A stretch of 64,000 bases of DNA from Haliotis rubra (GCF_003918875.1 NW_025765514.1:1488001-1552000); one strand, 5' to 3'; counted from the first letter of the stretch, positions 1,257 to 53,420 are shown. The notes: generated from the letters alone by a model not told the origin. Program-made: numbers and translations.

Positions 1257-1334
1257 TGACGTCATATCACCAGTTTGGTCACGTGGGGTATGGCTCTAGT
1301 GCTGTAAATAGCAGCGTGTTCCCCGAGTATAAAA
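1257..1334 (+). promoter_or_regulatory. Proximal promoter of bZIP gene 1 (CRE, E-box, TATA)
   Basis: TGACGTCA at 1257-1264, GTCACGTG at 1278-1285, TATAAAA at 1328-1334; AP-1 site TGAGTCA upstream at 1027-1033. Confidence 0.75.
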
Positions 1335-1357
1335 CCGCAGGCCGCGTCGGCTGGTGT

Positions 1358-1507
1358 CTAGATTATACTCTTATCCTCGTCCTGTAGCGCATGTCAGCTG
1401 TATTTTATTCAATTTCCTCCATCGTTGTTCTTTCCTTAACAACTGGACTGAATTTACTGTGCTTTCTGTACACGTTTAACACCAGCGAATGTTCTAGAAA
1501 ATAACAG
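1358..1507 (+). other. Non-coding first exon (5' UTR) of bZIP gene 1
   Basis: Begins about 30 nt after the TATA box (start approximate); ends at a perfect donor CAG|GTGAGT; next acceptor at 2735, 2 nt before the ATG. Confidence 0.65.
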
Positions 1508-2509
1508 GTGAGTTTTGTTTATACATGCCACGTGATTTAGCGTAGGCGGTTGGACATAGCTACAGCAGGAATGTCAGTGATGAAATTGTCAACAACATGA
1601 CTTTTACTTATAACTGAATATACTTCATATTTGGTTGACATGGTATTGTGAATACAGTTCGTATAGTGTATTTTGCTACAGCGATAAGCCGTTTCCATTG
1701 AACGCAAACGAAGCGAGTAAAATTGGATTGCGAAATACTACTGAACATTATCCCGCTGTTGTGTTGACTACCATTGTTTAGTGTGTGAAATTGTTATCTG
1801 ATATCATAAACGTATAGATAGCCCAGCTGTGGAGTGCTTCTGTACCGTGTAAGTCGAATACTGGTGTTGCAAAATACAATTTTGAGTTCACATCATAGTC
1901 TCAAATTACGCTCTGGCTGAACCGGCTCATTCATAAGTCGAGTTGTGTCGACGTCAGCATGTCTGATTGCGCAACTCGGCCAGGAAACCCTTTCACCCAC
2001 CCAATTCCAGTCACTGGACCGTGTGTGCTTAGGATGGGGCACCTGTCAGACCACCGTCACGTGCTAGAGCCCCGGGGTCAGAAGGAATGAATCCCCGAAC
2101 CCCGGTACTTGCGTTGCTTGTAGGTTAACACTGGGTCCTTATCGGCTGAGCTCAAAGGGTTTATTCATTTTTCACAACTGTACGTTGTAAACGCGGGCTG
2201 CTTATTTAGTTTATTTACAACTGAGATGTGTTTGGGGTTGTTTTGTTTTTTTATGTCTTTAATATTACAGTTCATTCAGAACACAACCTGGGAGGGGTTG
2301 GGAACCCCTCCCCAGGGTCCTCTTACCCCGTACACCCTTACCTTACCAAATTTCAATGATATATTTCTTTTAGAGACGGTTTAACAAATACGTGAGTGGT
2401 TTTTTTATGTCGTTTTCGGGATTTTGCTGTGGTTTCACTTCGAAGATAACAAGTAGCTATAGAGGCCTTCACACGTGTTATCCAAGTTGTGATTCGAACC
2501 AGGGTGTTA

Positions 2510-2670
2510 GGCAGTGGGGTAGCCTAGTGGTTAAAGCTTTGGCTCGTCACGCTGAAGACCCGGGTTCGATTCCCCACATGGGTACAATATGTGAAGCCCA
2601 TTTTCTGGTGTCCCTCGCCGTGATATTGCTGGAATATTGCTAAAAGCGGCGTAAAACTATACTCACTCAC
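2510..2670 (+). mobile_element. SINE family A (tRNA-Asp-like head) in intron 1 of gene 1
   Basis: A box TAGCCTAGTGG, B box GGTTCGATTCC, tail GCTGGAATATTGCTAAAAGCGGCGTAAAAC + (ACTC)n. Confidence 0.9.
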
Positions 2671-2737
2671 TTAGGCTACCAACTTATCCTATGCAGATTT
2701 GGGGCATTATACATATCTGTTTCTGTTGTCAACAGTT

Positions 2738-3166
2738 ATGAGGGAAACATTGGCGTTTGAGCTGCTGACATCCATCATGAACGACGACTGGCGAGCTGAT
2801 TCTCCCATTCCCTCCACCTCCAACGACACCGTTGAATCCATCGTCAGCTTCGGCCATGAGGAGCTGAGACTTGACACCAGCGAAGTGACCATCGACCCCA
2901 GCTATGAAGAGACGTTACAGAGCTTATACAGTGAAGACGACTCCCAGTCTGACCCTTTGTGGAACCCGAACTCAACATCCGACGCCAGCTCAACATTTGG
3001 GGGAGATAACTCTCTGGACTTCCTGTCACAGGACAGTTTCCTGGATGCGTCTGTTACTGATGTTGTCAAGGGGTCGTTGAAGTCTCGTATTCATGCCAAA
3101 CGACTTGCATCAGGTCAAGAGGAGATCATTGTAGACTTGGAAAGACCAACCTCTCCAAAAGAACCG
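2738..3166 (+). CDS. ATF3/JDP2/Fos-family bZIP transcription factor (gene 1), coding exon 1 of 3
   Basis: Acceptor ttctgttgtcaacag|TTATG; 143 codons MRETLAF...KEP, acidic Ser/Asp-rich, with LKSRIHAKRLASGQEEI motif; donor CCG|GTACGT, phase 0. Confidence 0.85.
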
Positions 3167-3585: not shown

Positions 3586-3693
3586 CTGACAGAAGAGGCA
3601 CTACAGCTGCACCTGGAGCGGAAGGAGAAAAATAGGGTGGCTGCGCAGAAGTGTCGGAACAAGAAACGGGAGCGCGCAGATCATCTGGAAAAT
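3586..3693 (+). CDS. ATF3/JDP2/Fos-family bZIP (gene 1), basic-region exon
   Basis: tttcag|CTG...AAT|GTAAGT; 108 nt, LTEEALQLHLERKEKNRVAAQKCRNKKRERADHLEN; N-x7-R basic motif; same size and phase as the Fos/ATF3 basic exon. Confidence 0.95.
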
Positions 3694-4084
3694 GTAAGTA
3701 AATGTAGATCCTTTGTTGATGCCATGTGACAAACATTTCTCGCTATTTCAAGGAGGTGGAATCATAATTTGTTTGTGGAAAGTGAATGCGTTTTAATTCT
3801 GTATTATGATTAATAGCTGTATTACGACTATCTATGAATAGTCGAGTCTGGATCTGACAACTTTTTTTTGAAAGCATGACAGGAAAGGGTGCATTGTCAT
3901 AAAGTCATCCAGGAGATGTTACGCCCTGTCAACATTATATTTGTTTGGAAGAGCATAGTGTAGAGTAGGGACCTCAACCACCGTATAATGGATCATTGGA
4001 AGTAGGTATTAGAAGCTTTGTGGATAGGGAACATCCCATTTTTTTGTCAAACGTGACTTTATGGTTTGGTGTATTTGTCAACAG

Positions 4085-4225
4085 GACATTAACCGCCTGG
4101 AGAACAAACAGGACCACCTGAAGGAAGAGATTCAGCGTCTGCAGGACGAGAGAGAACATTTGGAAGAAGTCATCAACATCCACAGTGTCGTCTGCCCAAA
4201 GATCAGGAAGATCTCCGACTCCTAA
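4085..4225 (+). CDS. ATF3/JDP2/Fos-family bZIP (gene 1), leucine-zipper exon with stop
   Basis: caacag|GAC; DINRLENKQDHLKEEIQRLQDEREHLEEVINIHSVVCPKIRKISDS*; heptad leucines followed by the HxxxC motif of Fos/ATF3/BATF proteins. Confidence 0.93.
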   Translation, partial: DINRLENKQDHLKEEIQRLQDEREHLEEVINIHSVVCPKIRKISDS

Positions 4226-5755
4226 GACTCTGAAGGTCAAGGTCATGAACATTTTCAGGCAGTGTCTGATCTAACCTTGTCCCCAACAAGGCGACATGAA
4301 CTATAGCTCAACTGGCAGCACATCTGTGACGCTAGAAACTATATGACGACTCGTATCTATGATAGTTTGTAGTTACCAGGTAACAAGGAAGACAGAAGAT
4401 TGCGTATTCCATAGAAGGAACATTTGGTGGCGAGGTGTCTCTTCTGTGGCTACAGGGGCATAGTCTGCCTTGTAATGGTTGTCACTGGAGACACTAACAG
4501 AACTAACATGGTGTTTAGTACAATAGACGGGTACTCGCCTTGTATTGATGGTTATATATACACCCCTGTGTATTTGACAAGCCAGTAAACAGTACTTAAC
4601 AGGGTTTAGACGATACGCCAAGTACCCAGTACTCTGAGGGGCATTATAGACTGAGGCATGCGTTTATGTAATCTATGTGTCTAGTTTTAGGGTTAAATGC
4701 ATGGGGACATATTGGATTGAAGATATGGATTCTGGATTAATGGCATAGTCAATTCTGGATAAAAGACAGTTCATAGGAATACTGGATTACAGACAAGATA
4801 TAATTAAAGTTAAAGTGTAGAGGAATATAGAAGTGGTTTTATATTCGTTAAAGGTTTAGGAGTTCTGGATGAGAGTCATCAGGTAGAATTACTTCACAAG
4901 ATGCAAAAGACAAAAGTCATTCAGTTGTGTTGCGCCAGTTGCAATAGTCTGAGAAACAGGTTCAAAAAGAAATATGAAGGAAGCCATTTAAGACCTTCAA
5001 GCCTTGTGTAGCCCATGTCTTAATTAGGAGTTATTAATATTTTATATCTTTGTTGATTGAGCGCTCAACTATTACTTCAGTGAAGGTCTTCATGAACGAA
5101 GTAGTGCCTTACTCTGGAAGAGGCAGACCGACAGTTGACCTATGCAAGATTGTGGTGCCATGTTTTTGGTATTTGTTTTTGTATTTTGTGAAACTAGTGT
5201 CAGCTGTAACCAAGAATTTAATAGCATATACCCGTACTCGATCTGTGTAAGACTTGCCAACTGTTTTATCATCATCATTCATCTTATTTCCATTTGAGAA
5301 AGAAATCGTAGTTTTTTTACCCTTTGAAACATTCGTCGGAATCTCTGGGTAATACTCCCTACAAGTGCCGGCCCTGCTGTCCGGAGATGGGGACGAGGGT
5401 GGTATGTCGTCATTACCCGACCCCCGACCCTCGAACCACCCGACAGGTTGAGAACGTGAACGAGATTGAGCGAATCAGTGTGTTTGAAGAATCGCGTGGT
5501 ACGTGACAAGAATGACTCCATGGCTGTTACGACGGTGTCAGAACTTGAAAGATTTAAGAACGAAGAAGAGTAGGCTCAAATAGACTATGAAAGATGTGAG
5601 ATCGACGGTTGTATTTTTTCTATTTATGAATGTATGTTAAGATGGCTTCTCTGTCTGAGCGTGGTGTCACGTAGGTTGAATATGAACGGTGTTATCATTG
5701 TGTTGATGTTGTTATATGTTTGTTTTAAAAATATAAAATTGTTTCTATTATGTTT
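4226..5755 (+). other. Probable long 3' UTR of gene 1
   Basis: Repeat-free sequence after the stop; only a variant poly(A) signal (AATATAAA near 5730) followed by a T/GT-rich tract; end uncertain. Confidence 0.4.
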
Positions 5756-5980: not shown

Positions 5981-6314
5981 GGTTAGAGCGTCCGCCCGGA
6001 GAGCGGAAGGTCGCGGGTTCGATCCCCGACCGCGTCATACCAAAAGACGTTAAAATATGGTACTGTTGGTCCCTGCCTGGCGCTTGGCATTAATGGGTAC
6101 AACAAGGACTGGTCGGCTCGGAGTCAGTATAATGTGTCTGAGTGGGGTATTCATGCTTCACTGCGGCATGGTATCTCAATGGGCTAGCACTATAAAACCA
6201 GCTTCAGTCTGGGCTAGTACAAGTACCCGCACATAGACATACACACGCATGCGAGTCGTCATATTAGCGATATATTCTCAAGTACGACGTTAAACCCAAT
6301 TCCATCTCACCTCA
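5981..6314 (+). mobile_element. SINE family B (tRNA head, Meta-domain-like body), slightly 5'-truncated
   Basis: Near-identical to 17898-18253; B box GGTTCGATCCC; body CATACCAAAAGACGTTAAAATATGGTAC. Confidence 0.85.
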
Positions 6315-6319
6315 CACAT

Positions 6320-9297
6320 ACTAAGATAATATGCTTTCAACCTCACTCAGAGTGGTACAGGTACTAAGATACATATACTTTCAATCTCATAGAGAGTGGT
6401 ACACATACTAAGATAATATACTTTCAACCTCACTGAGAGTACACATACTAAGATACATATACTTTCAACCTCACTGAGAGTGGTACAGGTACTAAGATAA
6501 TATACTTCCAACCTCACTGAGAGTGGTACAGGTACTAAGATACATGTACTTTCACCCTCACTGAGAGTGGTACAGGTACTAAGATACATATACTTTCAAC
6601 CTCACTCAGAGTGGTACAGGTCCTAAGATACATATGCGTTCAACCTCAGTCAGAGTGGTACACATACTAAGATTCATATACTTTCAAACTCAGTCAGAGT
6701 GGTACATATACGAAGATACATATACTTTCAAACTCACTGAGAGTGGTACAGGTACTAAGATACATATACTTTCAACCTCACGCAGAGTGGTACACATACT
6801 AAGATTAATTTACTTTCAACCTCAGTCAGAGTGGTACACATACTAAGATTCTTATACTTCCAACCTCACTCAGAGTGGTACAGGTACTAAGATACATATA
6901 CTTTCATCCTCAGTCAGAGTGGTACACATACTAAGATTCATTTACTTTCAACCTCACTCAGGGTGGTACCCATACTAAGATACATATACTTTCAACCTCA
7001 CTGAGAGTGGTACACATATACTTTTCTAAGATTCATACTTACTTTCAACCTCACTCAGGGTGGTACACATACTAAGATACATATACTTTCAACCTCACTG
7101 AGAGTGGTACACTGAGAGTGGTACACATACTAAGATACATATACTTTCAACCTCACTCAGAGTGGTACAGGTACTAAGATACATATACTTTCAACCTCAC
7201 TCAGAGTGGTACACATACTAAGATTCATATACTTTCAACCTCACTCAGAGTGGTACACAGGTACTAAGATACATATACTTTCAACCTCACTCAGAGTGGT
7301 ACAGGTACTAAGATACATATACTTTCAACCTCACTCAGAGTGGTACAGATACTAAGATACATATACTTTCAACCTCACTGAGAATGGTACAGGTACTAAG
7401 ATACATATACTTTCAACCTCACTCAGAGTGGTACAGATACTAAGATACATATACTTTCAACCTCACTCAGAATGGTACAGATACTGAGATACATATACTT
7501 TCAACCTCACTCAGAGTGGTACAGATGCTCAGATACATATACTTTCAACCTCACTCAGAGTGGTACAGGTCCTAAGACACATATACTTTCAACCTCAGTC
7601 AGAGTGGTACAGATGCTCAGATACATATACTTTCAACCTCACTCAGAGTGGTACAGGTCCTAAGATACATATACTTTCAACCTCACTCAGAGTGGTACAG
7701 GTACTAAGATACATATACTTTCAACCTCACTCAGAGTGGTACAGGTCCTAAGATACATATACTTTCAACCTCACTCAGAGTGGTACACATACTAAGATAC
7801 ATATACTTTCATCCTCACTCAGAGTGGTACAGGTACTAAGATACATATACTTTCAACCTCACTCAGAGGGGTACAGATACTAAGATAATATACTTTCAAC
7901 CTCACTGAGAATGGTACAGGTACTAAGATACATATACTTTCAACCTCATTCAGAGTGGTACACATACTGAGATACATATACTTTCAACCTCACTCAGAAT
8001 GGTACAGATACTGAGATACATATACTTTCAACCTCACTCAGAGTGGTACAGATGCTCAGATACATATACTTTCAACCTCACTCAGAGTGGTACAGGTCCT
8101 AAGACACATATACTTTCAACCTCACTCAGAGTGGTACAGATGCTCAGATACATATACTTTCAACCTCACTCAGAGTGGTACAGGTCCTAAGACACATATA
8201 CTTTCAACCTCACTCAGAGTGGTACAGATGCTCAGATACATATACTTTCAACCTCACTCAGAGTGGTACAGGTCCTAAGACACATATACTTTCAACCTCA
8301 CTCAGAGTGGTACAGATGCTCAGATACATATACTTTCAACCTCACTCAGAGTGGTACAGGTCCTAAGACACATATACTTTCAACCTCACTCAGAGTGGTA
8401 CACATACTAAGATACATATACTTTCAACCTCACTCAGAGTGGTACATATACTAAGATACATATACTTTCAACCTCACTGAGAATGGTACAGGTCCTCAGA
8501 TACATATACTTTCAACCTCACTGAGAATGGTACATATATGCTAAGACACATATACTTTCAACCTCACTCAGAGTGGTACAGATGCTCAGATACATATACT
8601 TTCAACCTCACTGAGAGTGGTACAGGTCCTCAGATACATATACTTTCAACCTCACTGAGAATGGTACAGGTACTAAGATACATGTACTTTAAACCTCATT
8701 CAGAGTGGTACACATACTGAGATACATATACTTTCAACCTCACTCAGAGTGGTACAGATACTCAGATACATATACTTTCAACCTCACTGAGAGTGGTACA
8801 GGTCCTAAGATACATATACTTTCAACCTCACTCAGAGTGGTACACATACTAAGATACATATACTTTCATCCTCACTCAGAGTGGTACATATACTAAGATA
8901 CATATACTTTCAACCTCACTCAGAGTGGTACACATACTAAGATACATATACTTTCAACCTCACTCAGAGTGGTACATATACTAAGATACATATACTTTCA
9001 ACCTCACTCAGAGTGGTACACATACTAAGACACATATACTTTCAACCTCACTCAGAGTGGTACATATACTAAGATACATATACTTTCAACCTCACTCAGA
9101 GTGGTGCAGGTCCTAAGATACATATACTTTCAACTTCACTCAGAGTGGTACACATACTAAGATACATATACTTTCAACCTCACTCAGAGTGGTACAGGTA
9201 CTAAGATTGATATACTTTCAACCTCACTCAGAGTGGTACAGGTACTAAGATTGATATACTTTCAACCTCACTCAGAGTGGTACAGGTACTAAGATAC
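6320..9297. repeat. 44-bp tandem repeat, about 67 copies
   Basis: Unit TACTTTCAACCTCACTCAGAGTGGTACAGGTACTAAGATACATA; local 88-bp dimer periodicity. Confidence 0.97.
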
Positions 9298-9406
9298 AGA
9301 TATAGATATAGATATATATAGATACACACACACACACACACACCATACAAGCATATACATAAAAACACGGACGACAGTCACACATACACAGACACACACA
9401 CACACA

Positions 9407-9604: not shown

Positions 9605-9664
9605 ACACACACACACACACACATGGGTATACACACGTTAACATCATTCTCTCAACATTCTCTG

Positions 9665-10489: not shown

Positions 10490-11470
10490 GACACATACAC
10501 GAAAAGACACAGACGCGTACACAAAAAACGTACACACATTTACACACACACACACACACACACTCACTCAAATACACACATTTACACACACTCACACACA
10601 TTTACACACATAAACAGACCACGTACACACTAAGACACACACAAAACACACACACATACAGACACAACACACACAGACAGAGACAACACACACAGACACA
10701 GCTACACACATACAAACACAGATACACACATACAGACACAACACACACAGACACAGATACACACAGACAGAGACAACATACACAGACACAGATACACACA
10801 TACAGAGACAACACACACAGACACAGATACACACATACAGACACAGATACACACATACAGACACAGATACACACATACAGAGACAACACACACAGACACA
10901 GATACACACATACAAACACAGCACACACAGACACAGATACACACACAGACAACATACACACACACANNNNNNNNNNNNNNNNNNNNNNNNNNNNNNNNNN
11001 NNNNNNNNNNNNNNNNNNNNNNNNNNNNNNNNNNNNNNNNNNNNNNNNNNNNNNNNNNNNNNNNNNNNNNNNNNNNNNNNNNNNNNNNNNNNNNNNNNNN
11101 NNNNNNNNNNNNNNNNNNNNNNNNNNNNNNCATACAGACACAGATACACACATACAGACACAGATACANNNNNNNNNNNNNNNNNNNNNNNNNNNNNNNN
11201 NNNNNNNNNNNNNNNNNNNNNNNNNNNNNNNNNNNNNNNNNNNNNNNNNNNNNNNNNNNNNNNNNNNNNNNNNNNNNNNNNNNNNNNNNNNNNNNNNNNN
11301 NNNNNNNNNNNNNNNNNNNNNNNNNNNNNNNNNNNNNNNNNNNNACACAGACACGCAGGCAGACACACACATCACGTACACACAACACACACATGTACAC
11401 ACATATTCTTACACAAACACCACTTACACACAGATACCAATAAAGTACACACACTCGCGCCCAGACACAC
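10490..11470. repeat. Degenerate CA-rich repeat (20-bp ACACAGATACACACATACAG units) spanning two N gaps
   Basis: Read directly; gaps at 10967-11130 and 11169-11344. Confidence 0.9.
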
Positions 11471-13094: not shown

Positions 13095-13132
13095 TACTCT
13101 TATTTCGAAGTAAAAGCTCGGTTCTTTCTTTT

Positions 13133-18253: not shown

Positions 18254-18877
18254 CTACCGCATAGCCTAATGGCAGAATACCGTTAATGAACAGCTGGTAC
18301 CGACACCTACAAAAGCTTGCAGATCAAACCTAAAACACTTTAAATAAACCGCATGTTTTAACACAAAGCAAATAAATAATACAACATGCCTGTGCTGGAG
18401 ACATTTCAATGTAAATATTTTAATCGCACATGCTCAGGGGACCATCATAATAGCTGAAGCAAATTGATTGTTGATTTGGTAATCGTGTGTGCTAGAATAC
18501 GACAGCTGTTTCACCAGCTGTTTCCCCAATTAGCGAATATAATAGAATGTAGTCATCAGAAATTATAAATAAATATTTTGCAGCAATTCGGTCGTGCCGA
18601 CTATTGTCTGCATTTATTCATATGGAAGATCTGTATCAGCATGTCACACTCCACAAGATGCGCGTGGTTATGATGACATTTAGAAAGTAGTCATATGTAA
18701 CCTGTGGTATATTTGGGTTTACACTTTCTCATTAAAGAACAGATTCCAGTACTTGAGTCCCATCAGGGATTCGAACCCACGCCATCAGTCACGAGTGATT
18801 GTCGACAAAACGAGTCATCAGTTCCCCATAACGTACTCATGGCCTTTACTATACTATTGCTCGGTGCCACAAAAAAG

Positions 18878-33997: not shown

Positions 33998-36900
33998 GGT
34001 GGCGCTGCTCTGCTGGCAACAGGTGTCAACAGAGCTCCTATTGTTTTTTGTATTTACACATGTGAATCAGTGCTGAAGGCCATTATTTTTGTGTTTGGCA
34101 ACCCAGCAAATATGGACGGATTCCACCGGTGTGTCATCTTGGCCATGACGTTGAATATGTTAATCCGTTACGAGTCGTCGAATTGGAGGCCGTTATTGAA
34201 CTCAATAACGGCGAACCAAGATGGACGTCATCGGCTCCAGTATGGGCGTGATGAGCTGCTGGCACTGCAAGGACATCTGCTATAGTCTTACCCCCTGAAT
34301 GTAATTCTAGTTTCAAATCTGAAAAGAAACGCTCCAGGAAAAGAGGTAAGCGAGGAGGAGTCCGCCGGCGGGTCCGGGCGCGGAAATCAAGACATCCTCC
34401 ACCGACCTTACTCCTCTCTAACGTTCGATCACTGAGGAACAAATTTGATGAACTTTACCCCAGCACGAGATATCTGTTTGAATATAGAAACAGTTGTGTG
34501 TTGTGTCTCACGGAAACTTGACAGTCAGCAGTGAATCTCTTCGTCTTGAAGGATTCGATTCCCCCATCCGTTTGGATAAAAGTGTGCAGGATACAGGGAA
34601 GACAATTGGATGGAGAGTATGCATGTACATTAACGAGAAGTGGTGTAAGAACGTTGTTGTTAGAGACAAACTGTGTTCAGTTAACATCGAACTGTCATCT
34701 GTGTCAATGCGACCAATATATTAGCCACGTGAATTTGGTCAAGTATTTGTTGTGCTTGTTTATATCCCCCAAGTGCGGACAATAAGAAAGCTGCGGATGT
34801 TATCCACGAGCATGTCCAAAATCTTGACTCAATTTCCCCAGATGCGCCGAAATTTGTGCTCGGCGATTTCAATGGATGTACTTTGAAATCAGTTCTACCC
34901 AATTACGAACAATATGTCAAATGTGAAACAAGGAAAGAAAGAACAATTGATTTGTGCTATGGAAATATACGGAAAGCCTACAAATCATACAAGAAGCCTC
35001 CTATTGGACTATCAGATCACAATAGTGTATTTCTCCTACCAACGTATAGACAGAAGAGACTGAAGTTAAAACAGTGAAATCATGGACTAGTGACTCTATA
35101 GAAAATCTTAAAGGCTGTTTTGATTGCACCGACTGGACTGTATTTTACGTTGACAATAACAACCCTGATAATCTAAATGATGTCATCACAAGTTATATCA
35201 ACTTGTGTGAAGACAATGTGGTACCTACAAAAAATATCAAAATATTCCCAAACAATAAACCCTGGGTCACTAAAGACTTCAAATCCTTGCTTAATGACAA
35301 AAAGCGAGCCTTCATGAAAAATGATATTATTCAACTTAGGCTAACACAGAAAGAAATCAATTTGAAGACACGCCAATGTAAAGCCGAGTACAAAGGACAG
35401 GTGGAACGCCAGTTCCAGCAGTGCAATCTGAAACAAGCGTGGCAGGGGATCAAGACAATGATTGGCGATACAAAGCAACGTGAGGACATTCATACAACAG
35501 ACAACGAAGTCTTTGCAGAAGAATTGAATTCATTTTATTGTCGTTTTGACTGTCATGATTTCAGTCAAGAGAGAGAGGACATATACGATAACATCGAACA
35601 TTCGGACACTTCCGTAACCATCACCATGACGTCCTACAGAGCTTCGCACGTATCAACATCAGAAAGGCTTCGGGACCAGACAAACCGGATGGTATGGTAC
35701 TCAAGGAGTGTAGACTACATCTGGCTTCAGCATTCACACGCCTATACCAACATTCATTGGACAATCACTCCATTCCAAATGTTTGGAAAACGTCAGAGAT
35801 CATACCCATTCCAAAGAAGTGCAAGCCACAAGAACTAAATGATTATCGGCCAGTCGCATTAACCTCCATTGCTAAGAAGTGTCTCGAGCGCATCGTTTTG
35901 TAGTTTCTGAAGACAGAAGTAAACCATCTACTAGACCCTCTACAGTTTGCATACAGATCCAAGCGCGGAGTTGTTGACGCCACACTGTCTCTTTGTCAAC
36001 AACGTATACAATTATCTCGAGACCCCCAAATCCTACGTTAGATTACTATTCGTTGATTTCTCTTCTGCCTTCAACACGATCCAACCGCACATCATGGTAA
36101 GAAAGCTGCAAACTATAGGAGTGAATTCACAACTGATTAGATGGATCTGAGATTTCCTCCATGCAAGATTTCAGTGTGTGAAGTTAACGACAGTGTATCG
36201 GCCATGAAGGTTACCAATACAGGAGTGCCGCAGGGTTGTGTTATGTCACCAGTACTGTTCACTCTATACACCAATGACTGCACTAGCGTAGAAAATAACT
36301 GTATAAATGTGAAGTTTGCTGATGATGCAGCCATTGTTGGTCCGATGTATGATTACGAATCAGAGCGACGATACATAGATAATGTACATAATTTCACATC
36401 ATGGTGTACAGAGAATCATTTGATTTTAAATGTGAAAAAGACAAAAGAACTGTGTATTGATTTCAGAACGAACTCCTCAACAGTACCACCTTTGTTCATT
36501 AATGATGAACCAATTGAGACAGTCACTGGATACAAGTACCTTGGAACCTTTATTGATAGCAGGTTAACGTGGAATACCAACACAGATGCCCTGTATAGTA
36601 AATGCCAACAACGCCTCCATCTAATGCGCAAACTGCGATGTTTTAATGTTTCCCAATCTGTTATGATGTTGTTTTATACAACTTTTATGCACAGAATACT
36701 CACTTTTTCTTCTCAGTGCTGGTTCGAATCTCTTTCAGTCAAAAACAAATAAAAACTTAACAAAATTGTAAATACAGCTAGTAAAATAGCCGGGGTCACT
36801 TTCGATAATCTTTCACTTCTCTATGAGCGGCAAGTACTCTCAACGTCTGAAGAAATCATTAATGACCCAACACATTTTTTAAATCAAGAGTATAAGCTTT

Positions 36901-45629: not shown

Positions 45630-46371
45630 TTGTACAGTTAATGTAGATTATGAACAAACATTTCGATTCGTCACCCAAACAAAGAGCTGTTATCAGATAA
45701 GCAATGTGAGTGCGGGGGTGTACTGAAGGTATGCCGAACACTGGGGGCAGATAGCAAGGACCTTGAGAGGCGTTATCTGACCGGAGACAATGTGTGTATG
45801 TGACGGGACGCAGCTAACACACTCCGTTACCACGGACAGGTTAGAGAGAACACGACGAGGGTCAGGTTTACAATCTCTGCCTTTACCTACTCGTGGATTG
45901 TTTAACAAAGTCATGTCCGATTTATGATATTGAAGAGTTGTGAATTAACAGGAGAACTGAGATATCGCTCGGTTAACGATTGGTTTTGCCGTTTTGGTAC
46001 TCACAAAACATAGACTTAGTGAGGTTTGTATATGAATAATATGTTTTGCTATCTCCCTCCCNNNNNNNNNNNNNNNNNNNNNNNNNNNNNNNNNNNNNNN
46101 NNNNNNNNNNNNNNNNNNNNNNNNNNNNNNNNNNNNNNNNNNNNNNNNNNNNNNNNNNNNNNNNNNNNNNNNNNNNNNNNNNNNNNNNNNNNNNNNNNNN
46201 NNNNNNNNNNNNNNNNNNCAAACTTGATAGTTATACAGTATATCTTTACACGGACGAGGGAGCTAGGGTCAATTTTAGTGTTGCATCAGGGAATTAGAGA
46301 TGATTAAGACTAAATATTGGTGTTTGGACTGAGAATATGTGTTGTGTGGAGGCGGAACGGGGTGTTGGAGA

Positions 46372-47999
46372 GTGAGGGTGACTGTTCAGGGTTAGCGTTG
46401 AGGGCTGGATTGAGGCTAAGCGTTGAGGGCTGTTTTGAGGGTCAGCGTTGAGTCCAGGGTTCATGGTGAGCGTTGATGGCTGTTTTGAGGGTGAGCATTG
46501 AGTCCAGGTTTCAGGGTGAGCGTTGAAGCCTGCTTTGAGGGTGAGCGTTGAACCCAGGGTTCAGGGTGAGCGTCGCTCAAGGGCCGTTTTGAGGGTGAGC
46601 GTTGAGGGTAGGGTTCAGGGTGAGCGTTGAGTCCAGGGTTCATGGTGAGCGTTGATGGCTGTTTTGAGGGTGAGCATTGAGTCCAGGTTTCAGGGTGAGC
46701 GTTGAAGCCTGCTTTGAGGGTGAGCGTTGAACCCAGGGTTCAGGGTGAGCGTCGCTCAAGGGCCGTTTTGAGGGTGAGCGTTGAGGGCAGGGTTCAGGGT
46801 GAGCGTTGAGTCCAGGGTTCATGGTGAGCGTTGATGGCTGTTTTGAGGGTGAGCGTTGAGTCCAGGTTTCAGGGTGAGCGTTGAAGACTGCTTTGAGGGT
46901 TTAGCGTTGAGGGTGAACGTTGTTTTGAGGGTTAGCTATTGAGGGCTAGGTTGAGGCTGAGCGTTGAGTGCTGTTTTGAGGGTGAGCTATAGTCCTGGGT
47001 TGAGGTTTGCGTTGAGGGCTGGGTTGAGGGTGAGCGTTGAGGGCTAGGTTGAGGGTGTAAGCGTTGAGGGCTGGATTGAAGGTGAGCTATGAGGGCTGAA
47101 TTGCGGGTGAGCGTTAAGAGCTGGGTTGAAGGTGAGCGTTGAGGTCTGGGTTGAGTGTGAGCGTTGAGGGCTGAGTTGAGGATGAGCGTTGAGGGCTGTT
47201 TTGAGGGTGAGCGTTGAGGGCTGTTTTGAGGGTGAGCTTTGTGTCCTGGGTTGAGGGTTAGCGTTGAGGGCTGAGTTGAGGATGAGCGTTGAGGGCTGTT
47301 TTGAGGATGAGCGTTGAGAGTTGGGTTGAAGGTATGCGTTGACTGCTAGGTTGAAGGTGAGCGTTGATGGCTGTGTTGAGGGTGAGCGTTGAGGTCTAGC
47401 TTAAGTTTCCGCGTTGAGGGCTGAGTTGAGGATGAGCGTTGAGGGCTATGTTGGGCTGAGCGTTGAGGGCTGTTTTGAGGGTGAGCGGTGAGAGTTGGGT
47501 TGAAGGTATGCGTTGACTGCTAGGTTGAAGGTGAGCGTTGAGGGCTGTTTGAGGGTGCGCGTTGAGTCCTGGGTTGTGTGTGAGCGTTAAGGGCTGAGTT
47601 GAGGATGAGCGTTGAGAGCTGGGTTGAAGGTATGCGTTGAGGGCTGGGCTGAAGGTGGGCGTTGAGGGCTGTTTTGAGGGTGAGCGTTCAGGGCTGGGTT
47701 GAGGGTGACCGTAGAGTCCTAGTTTGAAGGTGAGGGTGAACCTTGTTTTGAGGGTGAATTTTGAGTCCTGGATTGAGGGCGAGCGTTGAGGGCTGGATTG
47801 GGGCTGAGGGTTGGGGGCTGTTTTGAGAGTGAGCGTTGAGGGCTGTTTTGAGGGTGAGTTTTGAGTCCTGGGTTGGGGGTGAGCGTTGAGGGCTGGATTG
47901 GGGCTGAGGGTTGGGGGCTGTTTTAAGAGTGAGCGTTGAGGGCTGTTTTGAGGGTGAGCCTTGAGTCCTGGGTTGAGGTTTAGCGTTGAGGGCTGGGTT
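46372..47999. repeat. G-rich ~25-bp minisatellite with a 179-bp higher-order repeat
   Basis: Unit GAGGGTGAGCGTTGAGGGCTG(GG/TT)TT; near-identical blocks at 46461 and 46640. Confidence 0.95.
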
Positions 48000-49278
48000 G
48001 GTGTATATATATAGTGTTAGGTTGAGGACTTGGATAAGGGATATATATATGCACTGCACTAAAGTCACCTCTATCACCAACATGTGGGTGAGTTGTTTCT
48101 TGAACATATATCACTTCTTGTTTAAATTTAGATATGATTCGTGCTGCGCGGGTGGGAGTAGTCGGTGTATACAAGGATATAAATCAAGATACTAATCATA
48201 ATTCCTGCAGATTACAACTCTTTAGGAATACCTGTCAACACGAACAATTTGATTTGATTTGTGAACATGCAGTGCTCGAATATACACCAATACAATGCTT
48301 TTACGTTTTTATGGCATTGAAGTCAAAATTTTCAAACCCGTTGGAAATATGTTCATGTACAAATTCACCCTGATCCATCTTTCTCAGTGTGTGCGTGCGA
48401 GTATCTGCGTATGTGCGTGCGTGCGTACGTACGTGCGTGTTGTAAGTGTCTGTGTGTGTTTGTTTGTGTTACTATTTCAGCTACCTTACTTCATCTGCGC
48501 ATATGTTTCACATCAAAGCTTGCATCAGAAATCGTTTGGACTGTAACCGTCTGCGTTTATGTCCCAGGCCTCAGTCAAGTGCCTTGGTTCTTTAAAAAAA
48601 TCATACTTCATAGCTGATAACAATATCAACCAACACAAGAGCCACTGAGTGCATTGTAATCAATGTACCTATCTCCAATGAACTTCAAAATTAAAGAATT
48701 GTACAAACGAATGAACATTATCGTTTATAGAGCTATCACACGCAACAGTCAAGCATTATTGCACCGTTTGTCGGGACCCACTTATAGCCCATGTACACGG
48801 CGACATTCAGTTATTCAATAGCGAGTGTTATAAACTGTCCTGCCCGTCAAGCCACTCAGCCTCAACACAATAATCACGACTCCATATAACGTATTATTTC
48901 ACTAACAAATGAAATCGATGGGAATATTACGAAACGCAACAACGAATATTTGTTGACAGCGATCTGTTTCAACACAACAAAACAATCGTGCTCTGTGAAT
49001 TGATTCATCGATTACTGACGTGTTGTTCCGAATATAGTAACGGTCTTCCCCACGTTTCCTTCCTCTCATACACGTCATTTCTAACTTCGCTGCCCGTCCG
49101 ACTGGTACAGCTGGGATTTCATCACAAAGAGACATCTAGAATTCATTTCACGAAGGGCAAGGTCGTTTACCTCATGAATATTCATGATCAAACGGGCTTA
49201 AAACGTGATGCAGAAAAGCTATTGGTTGTTGACTGGTTAATAAATATGCAAGTAGGGTCAGAGTTGAAGAGGTTACAG

Positions 49279-49338
49279 TGACGCAAGCCCACTGAATATA
49301 TATACCGGCAAGTAGACCAGCTGATTTCATTGTCAGTT
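49279..49338 (+). promoter_or_regulatory. Proximal promoter of bZIP gene 2
   Basis: TGACGCAA (CRE / C-EBP hybrid) at 49279-49286, TATATATA at 49297-49304, Inr-like TCATT at 49327; no ATG between there and 49443. Confidence 0.72.
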
Positions 49339-49442: not shown

Positions 49443-49691
49443 ATGGTTCGCGTCGTGTGTCAGAATTTCCAGCGGCCGAGAAGCCGGCATACCTCGGGCG
49501 AGTCGCCTTATTCCGTTGATTCGGACTTGGCACGGAGAGCCGCAGAGGCCTTGACCACGATGACCGCCGCGGAGGGACGCAAGTTTGATTCAGATACAGA
49601 AACATCTAGCGATGCCTGTTGGGAATCGGATGGAGGTACATGTTGGGATGCTGGAACTAGCGACAGCGGAGCAGAGCCACCCAAAGACAAG
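49443..49691 (+). CDS. Divergent Fos/BATF-like bZIP (gene 2), coding exon 1 of 3
   Basis: 83 codons MVRVVCQ...PPKDK, Ser/Asp-rich; donor AAG|GTAGGT, phase 0. Confidence 0.8.
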
Positions 49692-50062
49692 GTAGGTTAG
49701 CTTGACCTAATTCACCGAGTTTCAGCTGACGATCAGCTGTGAGGGGCCGCACGTAGAAACTGCACTCCCGTATAGATAAAGCTGTTTACATGATAACAAG
49801 TGTTGACGACATTCATTAATTGTTAGTGGAGTTGCCTATTCATATATCACCGTCACGGGACTATGCGATTGTGCAATAATAGATCCAAGTCATGCTAAAT
49901 GAAATTGCGCAAAAAGTCTTCCGTCAGCAGTTACGCTCAGCTGATCCGTTGCCGACCCTATTCACCTACTGCGCAGGTTGCATTGAAAAGGGAGGTAACT
50001 CGCTGATCAATATTAGCGCGATATCGGCACACGAAGTATTGATGGATTTGGTTGTATTGTAG

Positions 50063-50167
50063 GACGCGCTGTTGAAGAAACGCAAAGCAAGACGGAGGGA
50101 GCGAAATAAGGTTTCAGCACAAGCTTACCGCCAGCGGAGGAAAGAACAGACACTCTCTCAGCAGAAG
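50063..50167 (+). CDS. Divergent Fos/BATF-like bZIP (gene 2), basic-region exon
   Basis: ttgtag|GAC...AAG|GTAAGA; 105 nt, DALLKKRKARRRERNKVSAQAYRQRRKEQTLSQQK. Confidence 0.92.
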
Positions 50168-51825
50168 GTAAGATATATGAAGCGGGAAGATAATGTCTCC
50201 ATTTTTACATTGGGTGTTTAAAAAAAGGCATTCTGATAAAAAGTTTTAAAATCTTAAATTCGAACAAATTGTTGTCCCTGGTGTAATGGTTTTAACAAAT
50301 TCGATTTGATTATACTTCGTTATTCATTCGTTACCGTCGACATTAATATTAAAACATGATTTTCGCTTCGTTTATTTGTTTCTCTCATAATATGATGGAG
50401 CGGATCACGATGGGTGGGGGTGGGATGGTGTTGGGGGGTGGTGGTGTGTGCTTAGATGTCAGCCTATTCACGTCGTTTGGGGTATTATGTGCAACCCCTT
50501 TTTTCAAAATCCTAGATTCACCTCAGTGATGTATCGTTACCATGGAATGGAATGCGTGATCCAGTCATCATGTCATTTGTCATAACTGTATGACCTGAAA
50601 GATGTCACGTTTCCATCATTACGTGTGGGTGGCTCGGAATAGTGATCGAGGTCATTGTCATCAGTGATAAATTATTTTGAAAGTCAGTTTTCAGATTTCA
50701 GTTTTCGAAGCACCCAAAACACGACAATTCCCACCCCGCATGGTAAATTCCCTGCGTAATTGCATCGGTGATAAATTATGATTCATATTCATATGCAATA
50801 TCTGGGTTAGTGAGTGTAGGCATGTTTTGTGTTTGTTTGTTTTTTGGTTTGTTTTTTAGTGAATGTCAGGGTTGTCAGTAATGCAGTACTGCAGATTCAG
50901 ATGTTTTTGTAGGATAAATAAAGCGAAATCCCTTGAACATTTTGGTCGAGAAAAATGGTTGCTTATTGTAACCTTCATTAAAATAACCCAGAGGCTTGCG
51001 TCACAAATTTTGTCCGTTATGTTGTAACTATTTTAATTTACTGCTCACGTAGAGTCTAGTCATAGCTCTAATACAATGTTGTAAGCGGTAAATGATGTTT
51101 CCGATGGCTAAATGTATCACATCTATATTTTATTGTTTTTACATTAAGCCGCGATCGTAATCAAAATTACTTTGTGAACACTTCTGAAGAGCTTTATACC
51201 ATCGCTGTGTCTATTGTTACTCCGAATAGTTGCTAGGCTTATTTAGTGATGGAATGTAAACTGAAAACTCCTGTCACAGATCAGTTGAGATTTTATACAG
51301 AAGAACTTCCCTCTTCTAATCATATATTGTAACATCTGTTACATTCTGCGAACCGGAATACACTTTTAGAGTCTCGTATGAAACGAAAATCTATTTTGTT
51401 ACATTTTCCGTAGCACCTGTAGGGCAAAGTACAGCTTGATTAATTATGTAGTCATCACAGTGGTGATATAGCTTTTAACAAATGCCGTTGTATCAGTCAT
51501 GTGATTCTCGAGCAGGACATTGATGTGAAAATAGAAACGATAACGAAACTAAATGCTACTTCCGCATTCTCGTGGTCACGTGACAGCTGAGTATGCATCA
51601 GGTGGATTGTTAATGGCATGCTTTATTACATTGTGGACTTGAATTATATTGTTGTCATTTGCATGTTTCAAACTTCTGCGTAAAGTAATAAGGTTATCCT
51701 TTCGTACAAAATGTCACCTCTTTTCTTTCCGAAGGTGCGGATTCGATCCCGTGTTTGCTAGTAATTCCTCATTACAATGACTCCACCACTTGAACAATGG
51801 CTAATCCGGTTATCTCCCCTTGCAG

Positions 51826-52059
51826 ATCCTGACTCAGTTGGAGGACCACAAGAAGGAACTGCTTGAGCAGATCGAGAAACTGCAGAAGGAAAAGTGTCAG
51901 GTTGAGACCTTCCTCCGTAGCTGTTTCACTCGACAGGAGCCAGCCCCTCAGGCTTCTTCATCCATGGATACCATGGCTCATCATTTCCATAATAATCATC
52001 GACATCATGAGAATCTGTGTCGTTCTTCCAACATTCCTGCAATCATGAGCGTATCGTGA
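51826..52059 (+). CDS. Divergent Fos/BATF-like bZIP (gene 2), zipper exon with stop
   Basis: ccccttgcag|ATC; ILTQLEDHKKELLEQIEKLQKEKCQVETFL aligns with the Fos zipper; His-rich tail. Confidence 0.9.
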   Translation: MLTQLEDHKKELLEQIEKLQKEKCQVETFLRSCFTRQEPAPQASSSMDTMAHHFHNNHRHHENLCRSSNIPAIMSVS

Positions 52060-53420
52060 GGAGAAGGCATCATCGGTGAAGGGAGTTCACAGCGGAGCCC
52101 GGCACGGACGGATTGGACCCAGGGTACCACGGAAACCTGGGGTGAGCTGGGATGTCTCGCTGATCTTGGGGAGGGATCCAAAAGGAAGTGACGAGTTCGA
52201 CCACCTCGGTGACCGAATCTTTCTTTATGAGATTTGTGTTTATTGACATTGAATCCCATTTTGAGACAGTCTATATCTCGTCATATATCTCGCGTACCAT
52301 CATCTCGAATCATATCAAGGAGACCCGTAAGTGGACGGAGACTGGTGATGGAGCCCCGAGCGGGGGGCGGGGAACTTGGCAAACCACAGAACGGAATCGC
52401 CTTGTTTACTCATCATCTTTCATGTCAGTGTAGTTACTACATAACCCTACCTCTATGACTTATAGCTGAACATTGCTGTCGTCGTACTTGATCGTGGTCA
52501 ATCTCCATATTGTCTGTCATTCAGTTCGTATTTGGACAGTCTGGTCAATGTCGGACAGTATATTATATTTATCTGCAGATCCAATGTTAGTGACGTCATG
52601 GTATTGTCTTGCCTTATTTGTTTCCTCAGTCGCTCATCGTGATCTGTCAACAGTTATCTCCCATCTTAGCGTGAGGTCACGTGACACTGACGTCACTTAT
52701 TTTAACGATTGCATCAGTCAAAGTCAGTAACCTATGGCAACATGACGCTTTATTCAGAGGATCTTGCATCAGAAAGAGGTAATTATGTCAAGGCCAGCAT
52801 CCGAGATTAACAATACTCGTTCCAATTTACCTCTAGGGATGACAGTAATCAAACACTCCCAGCATTGTAGTGTCATGTCACCATTTTCCTTGCTTTTTAC
52901 AAGATTTACTCGCAATTGATTTGTTGTACATGCTCTTCAGATTTGTACTTCTCATTTTCCTTACCATAAATCTAGAAGTTGTAGCGGTGCTATTCAGTAG
53001 TCGAGAAAAGCTGCACAGACAAAACATTAGGGTTTTGATTGTATGCAGAACACTACTGTTCTAACGATTGGTTGTAAATGCATAGTCTATTTTTATTCAG
53101 GGAAAACCCTGTCAAAGCGTGTTACGAACACAAAATGGCATTTTGAGATTGTTAAAATGTGAATCAACTGACCACTACCTACACAGTGAATCGCCATGCG
53201 CAATACAATGCATGCGGTTACACTGGTTTTCTGGCATCTGTGCGCTCTTCTCCCGACGAATGATCACATGATGGTACAGTAGTGTTGATATACGTTACCA
53301 TGGTAACAGCCAGACTGGCGAAGTGACATGTATTCGTTACTGGATGTATACGTCTTTAATATTCAAATTGCATAAGTCTTTCATATTTTTGTACAATAAA
53401 ACTGTGTTTATTGCACTCAA
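52060..53420 (+). other. 3' UTR of gene 2
   Basis: Repeat-free; AATAAA at 53395-53400. Confidence 0.6.

What the first reader, a model, noticed from the sequence alone, without database searches (positions are those of the whole stretch)
1257..53420. Tandem ATF3/JDP2-like then BATF-like bZIP pair: possible invertebrate counterpart of the FOS-JDP2-BATF cluster
Seen: two same-strand AP-1-type bZIP genes 45 kb apart with no recognisable host gene between them. Gene 1 has a non-coding exon 1 and a 108-nt phase-0 basic exon. Gene 2 has three exons and a 105-nt phase-0 basic exon. Known (from recall): Fos/ATF3/JDP2 basic exons are 108 nt, BATF-family genes have three exons with a 105-nt basic exon, and human FOS, JDP2 and BATF lie in that order on one strand, with ATF3 linked to BATF3. 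Inference: either an ancient bilaterian cluster or a lineage-specific Fos/ATF3 expansion.
Basis: partly seen in the sequence, partly recalled or inferred. Interest (0 to 1): 0.78.

Follow-up and report, generated by a model that had tools for sequence, protein, structure and literature searches.

The report
Old mollusc tandem pair of bZIP genes
Two neighbouring leucine-zipper transcription-factor genes in the blacklip abalone are real and have stayed side by side since before snails and clams split, but the second belongs to a mollusc-only family and cannot be shown to match vertebrate BATF.

Summary
The window is Haliotis rubra scaffold QXJH01000156.1. It carries two same-strand bZIP genes whose coding starts are 46.7 kb apart. 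My models equal the NCBI proteins: 'ATF3-like', 225 aa, and 'c-Fos-like', 195 aa. Gene 1 has a non-coding exon 1 and a 108-nt phase-0 basic exon; all three of its splice joints appear in spliced contigs of four runs. Gene 2 has three coding exons and a 105-nt phase-0 basic exon. No N stretch lies inside either gene.

- **The pair is old.** The same order and strand occur in Gigantopelta, the clam Mya and the scallop Mizuhopecten. In Mya it sits in a four-gene bZIP cluster.
- **Gene 1 is ATF3-class** by architecture, N-terminal motif and the Cys in its basic region. Its bZIP domain nevertheless groups with human BATF/BATF3 in my trees.
- **Gene 2 is not demonstrably BATF-like.** Its family was found only in gastropods and bivalves and was left unassigned in a published bZIP classification. 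It has an invariant Tyr where BATF has Ser and is closer to Fos/ATF3 than to BATF or ATF4. Its basic exon varies from 99 to 105 nt.

AU tests on the 63-residue domain reject no placement, so homology with FOS-JDP2-BATF stays open. Interest is moderate.

The parts
1257..1264 (+). Perfect CRE (TGACGTCA) upstream of gene 1. An AP-1 site lies at 1027, an E-box at 1280 and TATAAA at 1328.
   Evidence: Motif scan; sequence read.
1324..1507 (+). Gene 1 exon 1, non-coding. Its 5' end is approximate, because contigs cannot fix a start.
   Evidence: Spliced contigs of runs X1-X4 cover 1324/1358-1507 and join to 2736 with GT..AG ends.
2736..3166 (+). Gene 1 exon 2, with the ATG at 2738. It encodes 143 aa including the motif VKGSLKSRIHAKRLASG, which begins 49 aa before the basic-region Asn.
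3586..3693 (+). Gene 1 basic-region exon, 108 nt, phase 0. It holds NRVAAQKCR, with Cys at position 19.
   Evidence: Pfam bZIP_1 at 28.3 bits on this exon alone. Both joints are seen in contigs.
4085..5705 (+). Gene 1 last exon. It holds the leucine zipper (five heptad Leu), an H-x3-C tail, the stop at 4223-4225 and a 3'UTR of about 1.5 kb.
36141..36749 (+). Reverse-transcriptase fragment of a LINE-type element. It is the only Pfam-recognisable ORF between the two genes.
   Evidence: RVT_1, E 1.5e-11.
49279..49302 (+). Putative gene 2 promoter: TGACGCAA at 49279 and TATATA at 49297. This is inferred; no RNA evidence was obtained here.
   Evidence: sequence read.
49443..49691 (+). Gene 2 coding exon 1, 83 aa. 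It carries the family-wide N-terminus (MVR[VI]..PRSRH.SGE) and a Ser/Asp-rich stretch with a conserved Trp.
50063..50167 (+). Gene 2 basic-region exon, 105 nt, phase 0. It holds RRRERNKVSAQAYR, with Tyr at position 19.
51826..53420 (+). Gene 2 last exon. The zipper lacks the first heptad Leu. The stop is at 52057-52059, two perfect CREs lie in the 3'UTR (52591-52598, 52688-52695), and AATAAA is at 53395-53400.

Best explanation
The locus is an old, mollusc-wide tandem pair of Fos/ATF3-superfamily bZIP transcription-factor genes. In at least one bivalve it is part of a larger bZIP cluster.

Gene 1 is an ATF3-class gene. Its promoter carries CRE, AP-1 and TATA elements. It has a non-coding first exon, an ATG in exon 2, a 108-nt basic exon, a redox-type Cys in the basic region, a five-heptad zipper and an H-x3-C tail. 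It most likely acts as a stress or immediate-early AP-1 partner that dimerises with Jun/Fos-type proteins on CRE/TRE sites. That function is inferred from the family, not shown here.

Gene 2 belongs to a bZIP family found so far only in gastropods and bivalves. The family most likely arose by an ancient tandem duplication within this superfamily and then diverged fast. It has an invariant basic region RRRERNK-x-SAQ-x-YR (Tyr instead of Cys or Ser), no first zipper leucine, and its own conserved N-terminal exon. It probably binds CRE/AP-1-like half-sites as a heterodimer, with altered regulation at the Tyr position; this too is inferred.

The resemblance to the vertebrate JDP2-BATF and ATF3-BATF3 neighbourhoods is one of arrangement: an ATF3-class gene followed by a three-exon bZIP gene. 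It is not a demonstrated one-to-one orthology.
For: Gene models and transcript
- The models equal the NCBI proteins.
- The gene 1 splice pattern is seen in spliced contigs.

Distribution of the gene 2 family
- 47 hits with E from 1e-115 to 1e-15; all the named ones are gastropods or bivalves. A gap then follows to Fos/ATF3-like proteins at E of 1e-3 or worse.
- The Lottia member (233905) is listed without family assignment in Jindrich & Degnan 2016, Table S1 (PMC4736632).
- The SAQAYR motif occurs in no other of the 18 animals of that table.

Affinity of the gene 2 family
- Its profile against PDB scores c-Fos 39.8 bits, FosB 37.6, C/EBP-beta 31, Nrf2 30, ATF4 27.9 and Jun about 18.
- Against named reference domains it scores FOS 39.5-44.6, ATF3 42.6, BATF3 29.3, BATF 27.8 and ATF4 25-27 bits.
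- All checked members share three phase-0 coding exons, with the second intron 12 codons after the invariant Arg, as in gene 1.

Conserved pair, same order and strand
- Gigantopelta: 17 kb apart, gap-free, nothing called between.
- Mya: 9.3 kb apart.
- Mizuhopecten: 6.3 kb apart.
- The upstream neighbours form one clade with gene 1 (99/89 to 100/97).

Gene 1 as ATF3-class
- Cys-19 is the FOS/ATF3 state (PMC1479340).
- JDP2 likewise starts translation in exon 2 (PMC2724284).
- The motif VK..LK..I..KRL..G lies 47-49 aa before the basic-region Asn. Cnidarian Fos/ATF3-like proteins carry the pattern 48 aa upstream, and crustacean ATF3-class proteins carry a looser form at about the same place, seen by eye.
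Against: - The 63-column domain cannot place the gene 2 family. AU tests do not reject it with BATF (p 0.35), ATF4 (0.30), gene 1 (0.46) or as the first branch (0.52).
- The word-indexed protein search can miss divergent non-mollusc members, and unnamed hits could come from other phyla.
- The gene 1 bZIP domain groups with human BATF/BATF3 and Capitella 221193 (86/79; 96/94) rather than with ATF3/JDP2. The ATF3 label therefore rests on architecture and the N-terminal motif, not on the domain tree.
- The pair was not seen within 10 kb in Lottia, Patella, Solemya, Babylonia, Aplysia or Potamilus. It may simply lie further apart there, as in Haliotis.
- No RNA evidence was obtained for gene 2.
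- The functions are inferred from family membership only.
Confidence: 0.62

Rival explanations
1. Deep homology. The mollusc pair and the vertebrate JDP2-BATF and ATF3-BATF3 pairs descend from one bilaterian tandem pair, and the gene 2 family is a fast-evolving protostome co-orthologue of BATF.
For: - Same arrangement: an ATF3-class gene followed on the same strand by a bZIP gene with three coding exons.
- BATF3 has three exons and conserved linkage to ATF3 in vertebrates (PMC6479329).
- A Fos/Jdp2/Batf locus is recognised in mouse (PMC2724284).
- The pair is at least as old as the gastropod-bivalve split.
- The AU test does not reject gene 2 with BATF (p 0.35).
Against: - Tyr, not Ser, at position 19 in all 19 aligned members; Ser-19 is conserved in BATF (PMC1479340).
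- Lowest identity and profile scores among Fos-superfamily references.
- Long, conserved N-terminal exon.
- Basic exon of 99-105 nt, not a fixed 105.
- Jindrich & Degnan label the human BATFs as FOS and place a further FOS-family duplication in vertebrates.
- No non-mollusc member was found.
Confidence: 0.15
2. Swapped roles. The gene 1 family, together with Capitella 221193, is the lophotrochozoan relative of BATF or of an ATF3/BATF progenitor. The locus is then a BATF-related gene followed by a mollusc orphan. This overlaps with the main reading rather than excluding it.
For: - Gene 1, Capitella 221193 and human BATF/BATF3 form a group with 86/79 support, rising to 96/94 after long branches are removed.
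- Shared residues are EKNR-x-AAQK and a hinge 'AD-x-L'.
- Holding gene 1 with ATF3/JDP2 costs 5.4-7.8 lnL (p-AU 0.27 and 0.10).
- Mya carries a separate gene of 409 aa in the same cluster that is 41-42% identical to ATF3/JDP2.
Against: - The group was named after seeing the tree, from 63 columns, and no AU test is significant.
- Raw identities of gene 1 to BATF3, JDP2, ATF3 and FOS are all 33-45%.
- Gene 1 has Cys-19, a 143-aa N-terminal exon with the ATF3-type motif, and a non-coding exon 1, none of which BATFs have (BATF features from recall).
Confidence: 0.2
3. Gene 2 is a divergent ATF4-family gene that merely lies next to gene 1.
For: - Tyr-19 is the ATF4 state (PMC1479340).
- NCBI names the scallop orthologue 'ATF-4-like'.
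- The AU test does not reject gene 2 with ATF4 (p 0.30).
Against: - ATF4 scores only 25-28 bits, against 40-45 for Fos/ATF3, and identity is 25-27%.
- Lottia has a separate, assigned ATF4 (228997).
- Gene 2 shares both intron positions with gene 1 and the other cluster members.
- Linkage to Fos-superfamily genes is conserved in four lineages.
Confidence: 0.05

Closest known systems
ATF3 / JDP2 (vertebrates) and arthropod ATF3
   Same: For gene 1: Cys at basic-region position 19, a non-coding first exon with the ATG in exon 2, a basic exon flanked by phase-0 introns, an H-x3-C tail after the zipper, the N-terminal VK..L+..I..+ motif about 48 aa before the basic region, and a CRE/TATA promoter.
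   Different: - The basic region reads EKNRVAAQKCR, as in BATF, not ERNK-x-AAAKCR.
- The domain groups with BATF in my trees.
- The annelid relative (Capitella 221193) was left unassigned in the published classification, and no ATF3 was assigned in Lottia or Capitella.
BATF / BATF2 / BATF3
   Same: For gene 2: three coding exons, and a position downstream of an ATF3-class gene on the same strand. The 105-nt basic exon in Haliotis matches the size recalled for BATF, which was not checked here.
   Different: - Tyr instead of the conserved Ser-19.
- 192-490 aa with a conserved N-terminal exon, against about 125 aa for a bZIP-only protein.
- No first zipper leucine.
- 27-30% identity.
- Basic-exon length is not conserved in the family (99-105 nt).
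FOS family
   Same: Fos gives the best PDB and reference matches of the gene 2 family profile (c-Fos 39.8 bits), and the intron positions are the same.
   Different: There is no Cys-19 and no Fos-type C-terminal region. The family is a separate long-branch clade (100/100).
ATF4 / ATF5
   Same: Tyr at basic-region position 19.
   Different: Similarity is much lower. Molluscs have a separate true ATF4. Gene 2 is linked to, and shares exon structure with, Fos-superfamily genes.
Vertebrate FOS-JDP2-BATF and ATF3-BATF3 neighbourhoods
   Same: Physically linked Fos-superfamily bZIP genes, with an ATF3-class gene next to a three-exon bZIP gene. In Mya four such genes lie within 23 kb.
   Different: - No true Fos lies within 10 kb upstream in H. 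rubra.
- Member-by-member orthology is not shown.
- The mollusc cluster also contains families with Tyr-19 and Phe-19 that have no vertebrate counterpart.

Membership tests
bZIP superfamily (Pfam PF00170/PF07716) | Basic region N-x7-R followed by a heptad leucine zipper | tested here: met
   - Gene 1 basic exon alone: bZIP_1 28.3 bits, above the 27.6 cut-off.
- Gene 2 basic exon alone: 20.1 bits, below the cut-off. Its orthologues carry precomputed PF00170/PF07716 hits, and the family profile hits c-Fos at E 3.5e-9.
ATF3/JDP2 class (gene 1) | Cys at basic-region position 19 (C19 families include ATF3 and FOS; PMC1479340) | tested here: met
   NRVAAQKCR in gene 1 and all six family members.
ATF3/JDP2 class (gene 1) | Non-coding exon 1 with translation starting in exon 2 (JDP2: PMC2724284) | tested here: met
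   Spliced contigs join 1507 to 2736, and the ATG is at 2738.
ATF3/JDP2 class (gene 1) | N-terminal VK..L+..I..+ motif upstream of the basic region | tested here: met
   The pattern lies 47-49 aa upstream in the gene 1 family and 48 aa upstream in cnidarian Fos/ATF3-like proteins. Crustacean ATF3-class proteins show a looser form (IKEGLKLQIRSKLQAAG) at about the same distance, found by eye and not by the pattern. Its presence in human ATF3 is from recall only.
ATF3/JDP2 class (gene 1) | bZIP domain groups with ATF3/JDP2 in a phylogeny | tested here: inconclusive
   - With the ATF3 class at 91/83 when no BATF is in the set.
- With BATF at 86/79 and 96/94 when BATF is included.
- AU p 0.27 and 0.10 for the ATF3 grouping.
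BATF family (gene 2) | Ser at basic-region position 19 (PMC1479340) | tested here: not met
   Tyr is invariant in all 19 aligned family members.
BATF family (gene 2) | Small bZIP-only protein of about 125 aa | tested here: not met
   Members are 192-490 aa, with a conserved first exon of 83-100 aa. The BATF size is from recall.
BATF family (gene 2) | Three exons (BATF3: PMC6479329) | tested here: met
   Three phase-0 coding exons in seven species.
   105 nt only in Haliotis; 102 in Gigantopelta, Mya and Mizuhopecten; 99 in Lottia, Patella and Solemya. The gene 1 family is constant at 108.
BATF family (gene 2) | Closest sequence similarity or clade with BATF | tested here: not met
   - Identity to BATF 27% and BATF3 30%, against ATF3 43% and FOS 44%.
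- Profile scores 27.8/29.3 bits against 39.5-44.6.
- The tree is unresolved: AU p 0.35.
ATF4 family (gene 2) | Tyr-19 plus overall ATF4-like domain | tested here: inconclusive
   Tyr-19 is present, but ATF4 scores only 25-28 bits and Lottia has a separate ATF4. AU p 0.30.
Conserved FOS-ATF3/JDP2-BATF microsynteny | Same linked families in other phyla, with shared flanking genes | not testable with these tools
   Linkage was shown only within molluscs.

The most novel reading that the evidence does not exclude
The mollusc locus is a surviving piece of a bilaterian Fos-superfamily gene array that also gave rise to the vertebrate FOS-JDP2-BATF and ATF3-BATF3 neighbourhoods. Under this reading the gene 1 family, with annelid Capitella 221193, is the protostome counterpart of BATF or of an ATF3/BATF progenitor, so BATF-type genes would not be a vertebrate invention. 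The Tyr-19 family (gene 2) would then be a mollusc-specific offshoot of the same array.
Probability: 0.2. Interest if true: 0.65.

Novelty: new variant of a known kind. Interest (0 to 1): 0.42.

Why it matters
bZIP dimer networks are a textbook case of transcription-factor diversification. The origin of the immune regulator BATF and of the FOS-JDP2-BATF neighbourhood is usually placed in vertebrates.

- A tandem pair that has been held together since before gastropods and bivalves split points to shared regulation or constraint on a stress-response locus. In Mya the pair extends to a four-gene cluster.
- It also defines a mollusc-wide bZIP family that a published classification left unassigned. 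The family has an unusual, invariant DNA-contact residue (Tyr) and a truncated zipper.
- That gives a concrete target for studies of binding specificity and dimerisation.
- It gives a defined locus at which the deep-homology question can be tested with chromosome-level genomes of other phyla.

Tried and rejected
- **Representative search with the 35-aa basic exon of gene 2**. It returned only the gene's own cluster and one Nucella protein. It served to get a protein id but says nothing about distant kin.
- **Third homology search, with the gene 1 bZIP region**. It drew only 11 candidates and 4 hits, so it gave no wide sample of ATF3, FOS or BATF proteins. I therefore took reference domains of 57-64 aa each from a paper's supplementary table and from a PDB alignment.
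- **PDB** holds no ATF3, JDP2 or BATF chain that matched.
- **AU tests of six placements** rejected none. The domain is too short.
- **First tree rooted on protist membrane-anchored bZIPs**. It carried long-branch warnings, and I replaced it with a tree rooted on JUN.
- **P0009, an 85-aa cluster member.** It covers only exon 1 of a Haliotis relative, so it is no splice evidence for gene 2.
- **Pomacea model P0049.** It lacks the basic region, probably through a faulty gene model, and was left out.
- **Look-ups around gene 2 orthologues** in Lottia, Patella, Solemya, Babylonia, Aplysia and Potamilus. None showed a gene 1-type neighbour within 10 kb. This is uninformative, since Haliotis needs 45 kb.
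- **Literature searches** for invertebrate BATF, for synteny of the FOS-JDP2-BATF cluster and for abalone ATF3 found no study of this pair.
- **The search of earlier findings by words** returned nothing.
- **The reading 'recent paralogues of each other'** is rejected. Each gene has its own clade of orthologues across two mollusc classes.

Full report
**What is there**

The window is Haliotis rubra scaffold QXJH01000156.1, bases 1,488,001-1,552,000. A six-frame scan finds exactly two bZIP basic regions, both on the + strand.

Gene 1
- Its coding sequence is 2738-3166, 3586-3693 and 4085-4225, giving 225 aa. All splice sites are GT/AG and all introns are phase 0.
- The product is identical to the NCBI protein 'activating transcription factor 3-like' (P0001).

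Gene 2
- Its coding sequence is 49443-49691, 50063-50167 and 51826-52059, giving 195 aa.
- The product is identical to XP_046561987.1 'proto-oncogene c-Fos-like' (P0004).
- Its orthologues in three other Haliotis species are named 'uncharacterized' or 'kayak-like'. That already shows the annotation pipelines cannot classify it.

In both genes the following intron lies 12 codons after the invariant Arg.

**Transcript evidence**

- Four runs of one study each hold one spliced contig of about 2.3 kb. It lies on about 1324-1507, 2736-3166, 3586-3693 and 4085-about 5705, with three GT..AG joints.
- This confirms the non-coding exon 1 and the 108-nt exon of gene 1.
- The runs are recorded only as 'RNA?'. 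The spliced form is what argues for RNA.
Its support is the NCBI model plus an intact, identically structured gene in seven species.

**N stretches and the spacer**

- None of the four N stretches in the finding's span touches either gene.
- Record coordinates reproduce the window spacing exactly: 46,705 nt between the two coding starts.
- The record copies fetched around both genes contain no N runs. The stretches at 10967-11344 and 46062-46218 are therefore continuous in the assembly. I did not read their letters.
- The stretch at 26732-27161 was not covered.
- Between the genes lie minisatellites, SINEs and one reverse-transcriptase fragment.
- No gene is called within 10 kb of either gene on the inner side, nor in the 10 kb upstream of gene 1. 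No Fos gene therefore lies immediately upstream.

**Gene 2 belongs to a mollusc-wide family**

- A profile of the Haliotis and Nucella proteins finds 47 proteins with E between 1e-115 and 1e-15. Every named one is a gastropod or a bivalve. The score then drops to Fos/ATF3-like proteins at E of 1e-3 or worse.
- The family shares an N-terminus MVR[VI], a PRSRH.SGE motif, a Ser/Asp-rich stretch with a conserved Trp, and an invariant basic region RRRERNK-x-SAQ-x-YR.
- The Lottia member (233905) appears without family assignment in Jindrich & Degnan 2016, Table S1. The SAQAYR motif occurs in none of the other 17 animals listed there.

**Is gene 2 BATF-like?**

Amoutzias et al. 2006 report that basic-region position 19 is Cys in FOS and ATF3, Ser in BATF and Tyr in ATF4, conserved from invertebrates to vertebrates. 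Gene 2 has Tyr.

| Comparison for gene 2 | FOS | ATF3 | JDP2 | BATF3 | BATF | ATF4 | JUN |
|---|---|---|---|---|---|---|---|
| Identity to the H. rubra domain, 63 columns | 44% | 43% | 39% | 30% | 27% | 25% | 22% |
| Family profile score, bits | 39.5-44.6 | 42.6 | 27.5 | 29.3 | 27.8 | 25-27 | about 18 |

- Against PDB the best match is c-Fos at 39.8 bits, with ATF4 at 27.9.
- The 105-nt exon is not a family trait. It is 102 nt in Gigantopelta, Mya and Mizuhopecten, and 99 nt in Lottia, Patella and Solemya. The gene 1 family keeps 108 nt.
- So the defining BATF residue, size and similarity are not met. Only the three-exon structure and the neighbourhood resemble BATF; grass-carp BATF3 has three exons and ATF3-BATF3 linkage is conserved in vertebrates.
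- The domain is nevertheless too short to decide. AU tests do not reject gene 2 with BATF (p 0.35), ATF4 (0.30), gene 1 (0.46) or as the earliest branch (0.52).

**The pair is ancient**

| Species | Arrangement | Distance |
|---|---|---|
| Gigantopelta aegis | Gene 1 orthologue (P0068), then gene 2 orthologue (P0015), same strand; gap-free, nothing called between | 17 kb |
| Mya arenaria | A 308-aa gene with a gene 1-type basic exon and zipper, upstream of the gene 2 orthologue, same strand | 9.3 kb |
| Mizuhopecten yessoensis | A 248-aa gene 1-type gene upstream, same strand | 6.3 kb |

- These upstream neighbours form one clade with gene 1 (100/97; 99/89). The gene 2 family forms another (100/100), whose inner branching roughly follows mollusc classes.
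- The two genes are therefore not recent paralogues, and the arrangement predates the gastropod-bivalve split.
- In Mya two more bZIP genes follow. One is a 409-aa gene that is 41-42% identical to ATF3/JDP2. The other is a 140-aa gene with Phe at position 19, on the other strand.
- Lottia has a 171-aa Phe-19 gene 6.4 kb downstream of its gene 2 orthologue.
- All these genes have the intron 12 codons after the invariant Arg. Molluscs thus carry a cluster of Fos-superfamily bZIP genes.
- Within 10 kb, no gene 1-type neighbour was seen in Lottia, Patella, Solemya, Babylonia, Aplysia or Potamilus. This is uninformative, because Haliotis itself needs 45 kb.

**What is gene 1?**

For the ATF3/JDP2 class:
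- Cys-19.
- A four-exon structure with a non-coding exon 1, as in JDP2, whose start codon is in exon 2.
- A CRE, an AP-1 site and a TATA box upstream.
- The motif VK..LK..I..KRL..G 47-49 aa before the basic-region Asn. Cnidarian Fos/ATF3-like proteins have the pattern 48 aa upstream, and crustacean ATF3-class proteins show a looser form in about the same place.

Unexpectedly against it:
- The basic region and hinge read EKNRVAAQKCR...AD-x-L, as in BATF/BATF3.
- In trees that include BATF, the gene 1 family and Capitella 221193 group with human BATF/BATF3 (86/79; 96/94 after pruning long branches).
- Forcing gene 1 with ATF3/JDP2 costs 5.4-7.8 lnL, which is not significant (p 0.27 and 0.10).
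- I named this group after seeing the tree, so it is a lead and not a result.
- Jindrich & Degnan left Capitella 221193 unassigned and assigned no ATF3 in Lottia or Capitella. They label human BATF, BATF3 and JDP2 all as 'FOS'.

**Verdict**

It is wrong or unproven on the key label, because gene 2 is a member of a mollusc-restricted Tyr-19 family and not a recognisable BATF. Whether the mollusc cluster and the vertebrate FOS-JDP2-BATF neighbourhood share an ancestral array remains open.

**Basis of the functional statements**

The reading as AP-1-type dimeric factors on CRE/TRE-like sites, with immediate-early regulation of gene 1 and altered control at Tyr-19 in gene 2, is inferred from family knowledge and promoter motifs. 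It was not shown here.

Noticed in passing
window 2510-2672 (intron 1 of gene 1): A tRNA-related SINE copy draws thousands of contigs from the four runs. Summed word depth is 5.9e4-1.9e5, against about 6-15 for the gene's exons. Many contigs have loose ends, so this is a very abundant and probably transcribed repeat family.
   Followed up: no
L006 (Mya arenaria CP111022.1, 16885241-16908246): Four bZIP genes lie within 23 kb: a gene 1-type gene (308 aa), the gene 2 orthologue (271 aa), a 409-aa ATF3-like gene carrying the same N-terminal motif, and a 140-aa Phe-19 gene on the opposite strand. All have the intron 12 codons after the invariant Arg.
   Followed up: partly
L005 (Lottia gigantea KB202481.1), 19273-20826: A 171-aa bZIP with Phe at position 19 lies 6.4 kb downstream of the gene 2 orthologue. 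It is Lotgi 164399, unassigned in the published table, and pairs with the Mya 140-aa gene in trees (96/82).
   Followed up: partly
window 3586-4225 (gene 1 bZIP domain): The gene 1 bZIP domain and Capitella 221193 group with human BATF/BATF3 rather than with ATF3/JDP2 (86/79 and 96/94). The group is driven by EKNR-x-AAQK and an 'AD-x-L' hinge. It is not significant in AU tests.
   Followed up: partly
window 10967-11344, 46062-46218, 55366-55528: The public record copies fetched around the two genes (L001, L002) contain no N runs, and the coordinates are collinear. These N stretches therefore look masked rather than true assembly gaps. Their letters were not read.
   Followed up: partly
window 54172-55072 (- strand): The public annotation calls a 179-aa gene with no Pfam hit that lies almost wholly inside a 36-bp minisatellite (53960-55048). 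It is probably a spurious model.
   Followed up: no
window 6314-9302, 13125-14515, 18877-21855, 46384-48000, 61827-63136: Five large minisatellite arrays with periods of 44, 27, 25, 25 and 44 bp and 30-118 copies fill much of the spacer and the downstream flank.
   Followed up: no
window 52591-52598 and 52688-52695: Two perfect CRE palindromes (TGACGTCA) lie about 100 nt apart in the 3'UTR of gene 2. They might be an autoregulatory or downstream enhancer element, or chance.
   Followed up: no
Jindrich & Degnan 2016 Table S1: Sea-urchin ATF3 and one FOS entry have NCBI GI numbers only four apart (390348410 and 390348414). This hints that the two genes are neighbours in that genome.
   Followed up: no
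window 4085-5705: The spliced contigs differ from the window at 58-60 of about 1610 positions in the 3'UTR, at none in the 108-nt exon, and at 10-12 of 435 in exon 2. The runs therefore come from a different individual or a close relative, and the coding part is under constraint.
   Followed up: no
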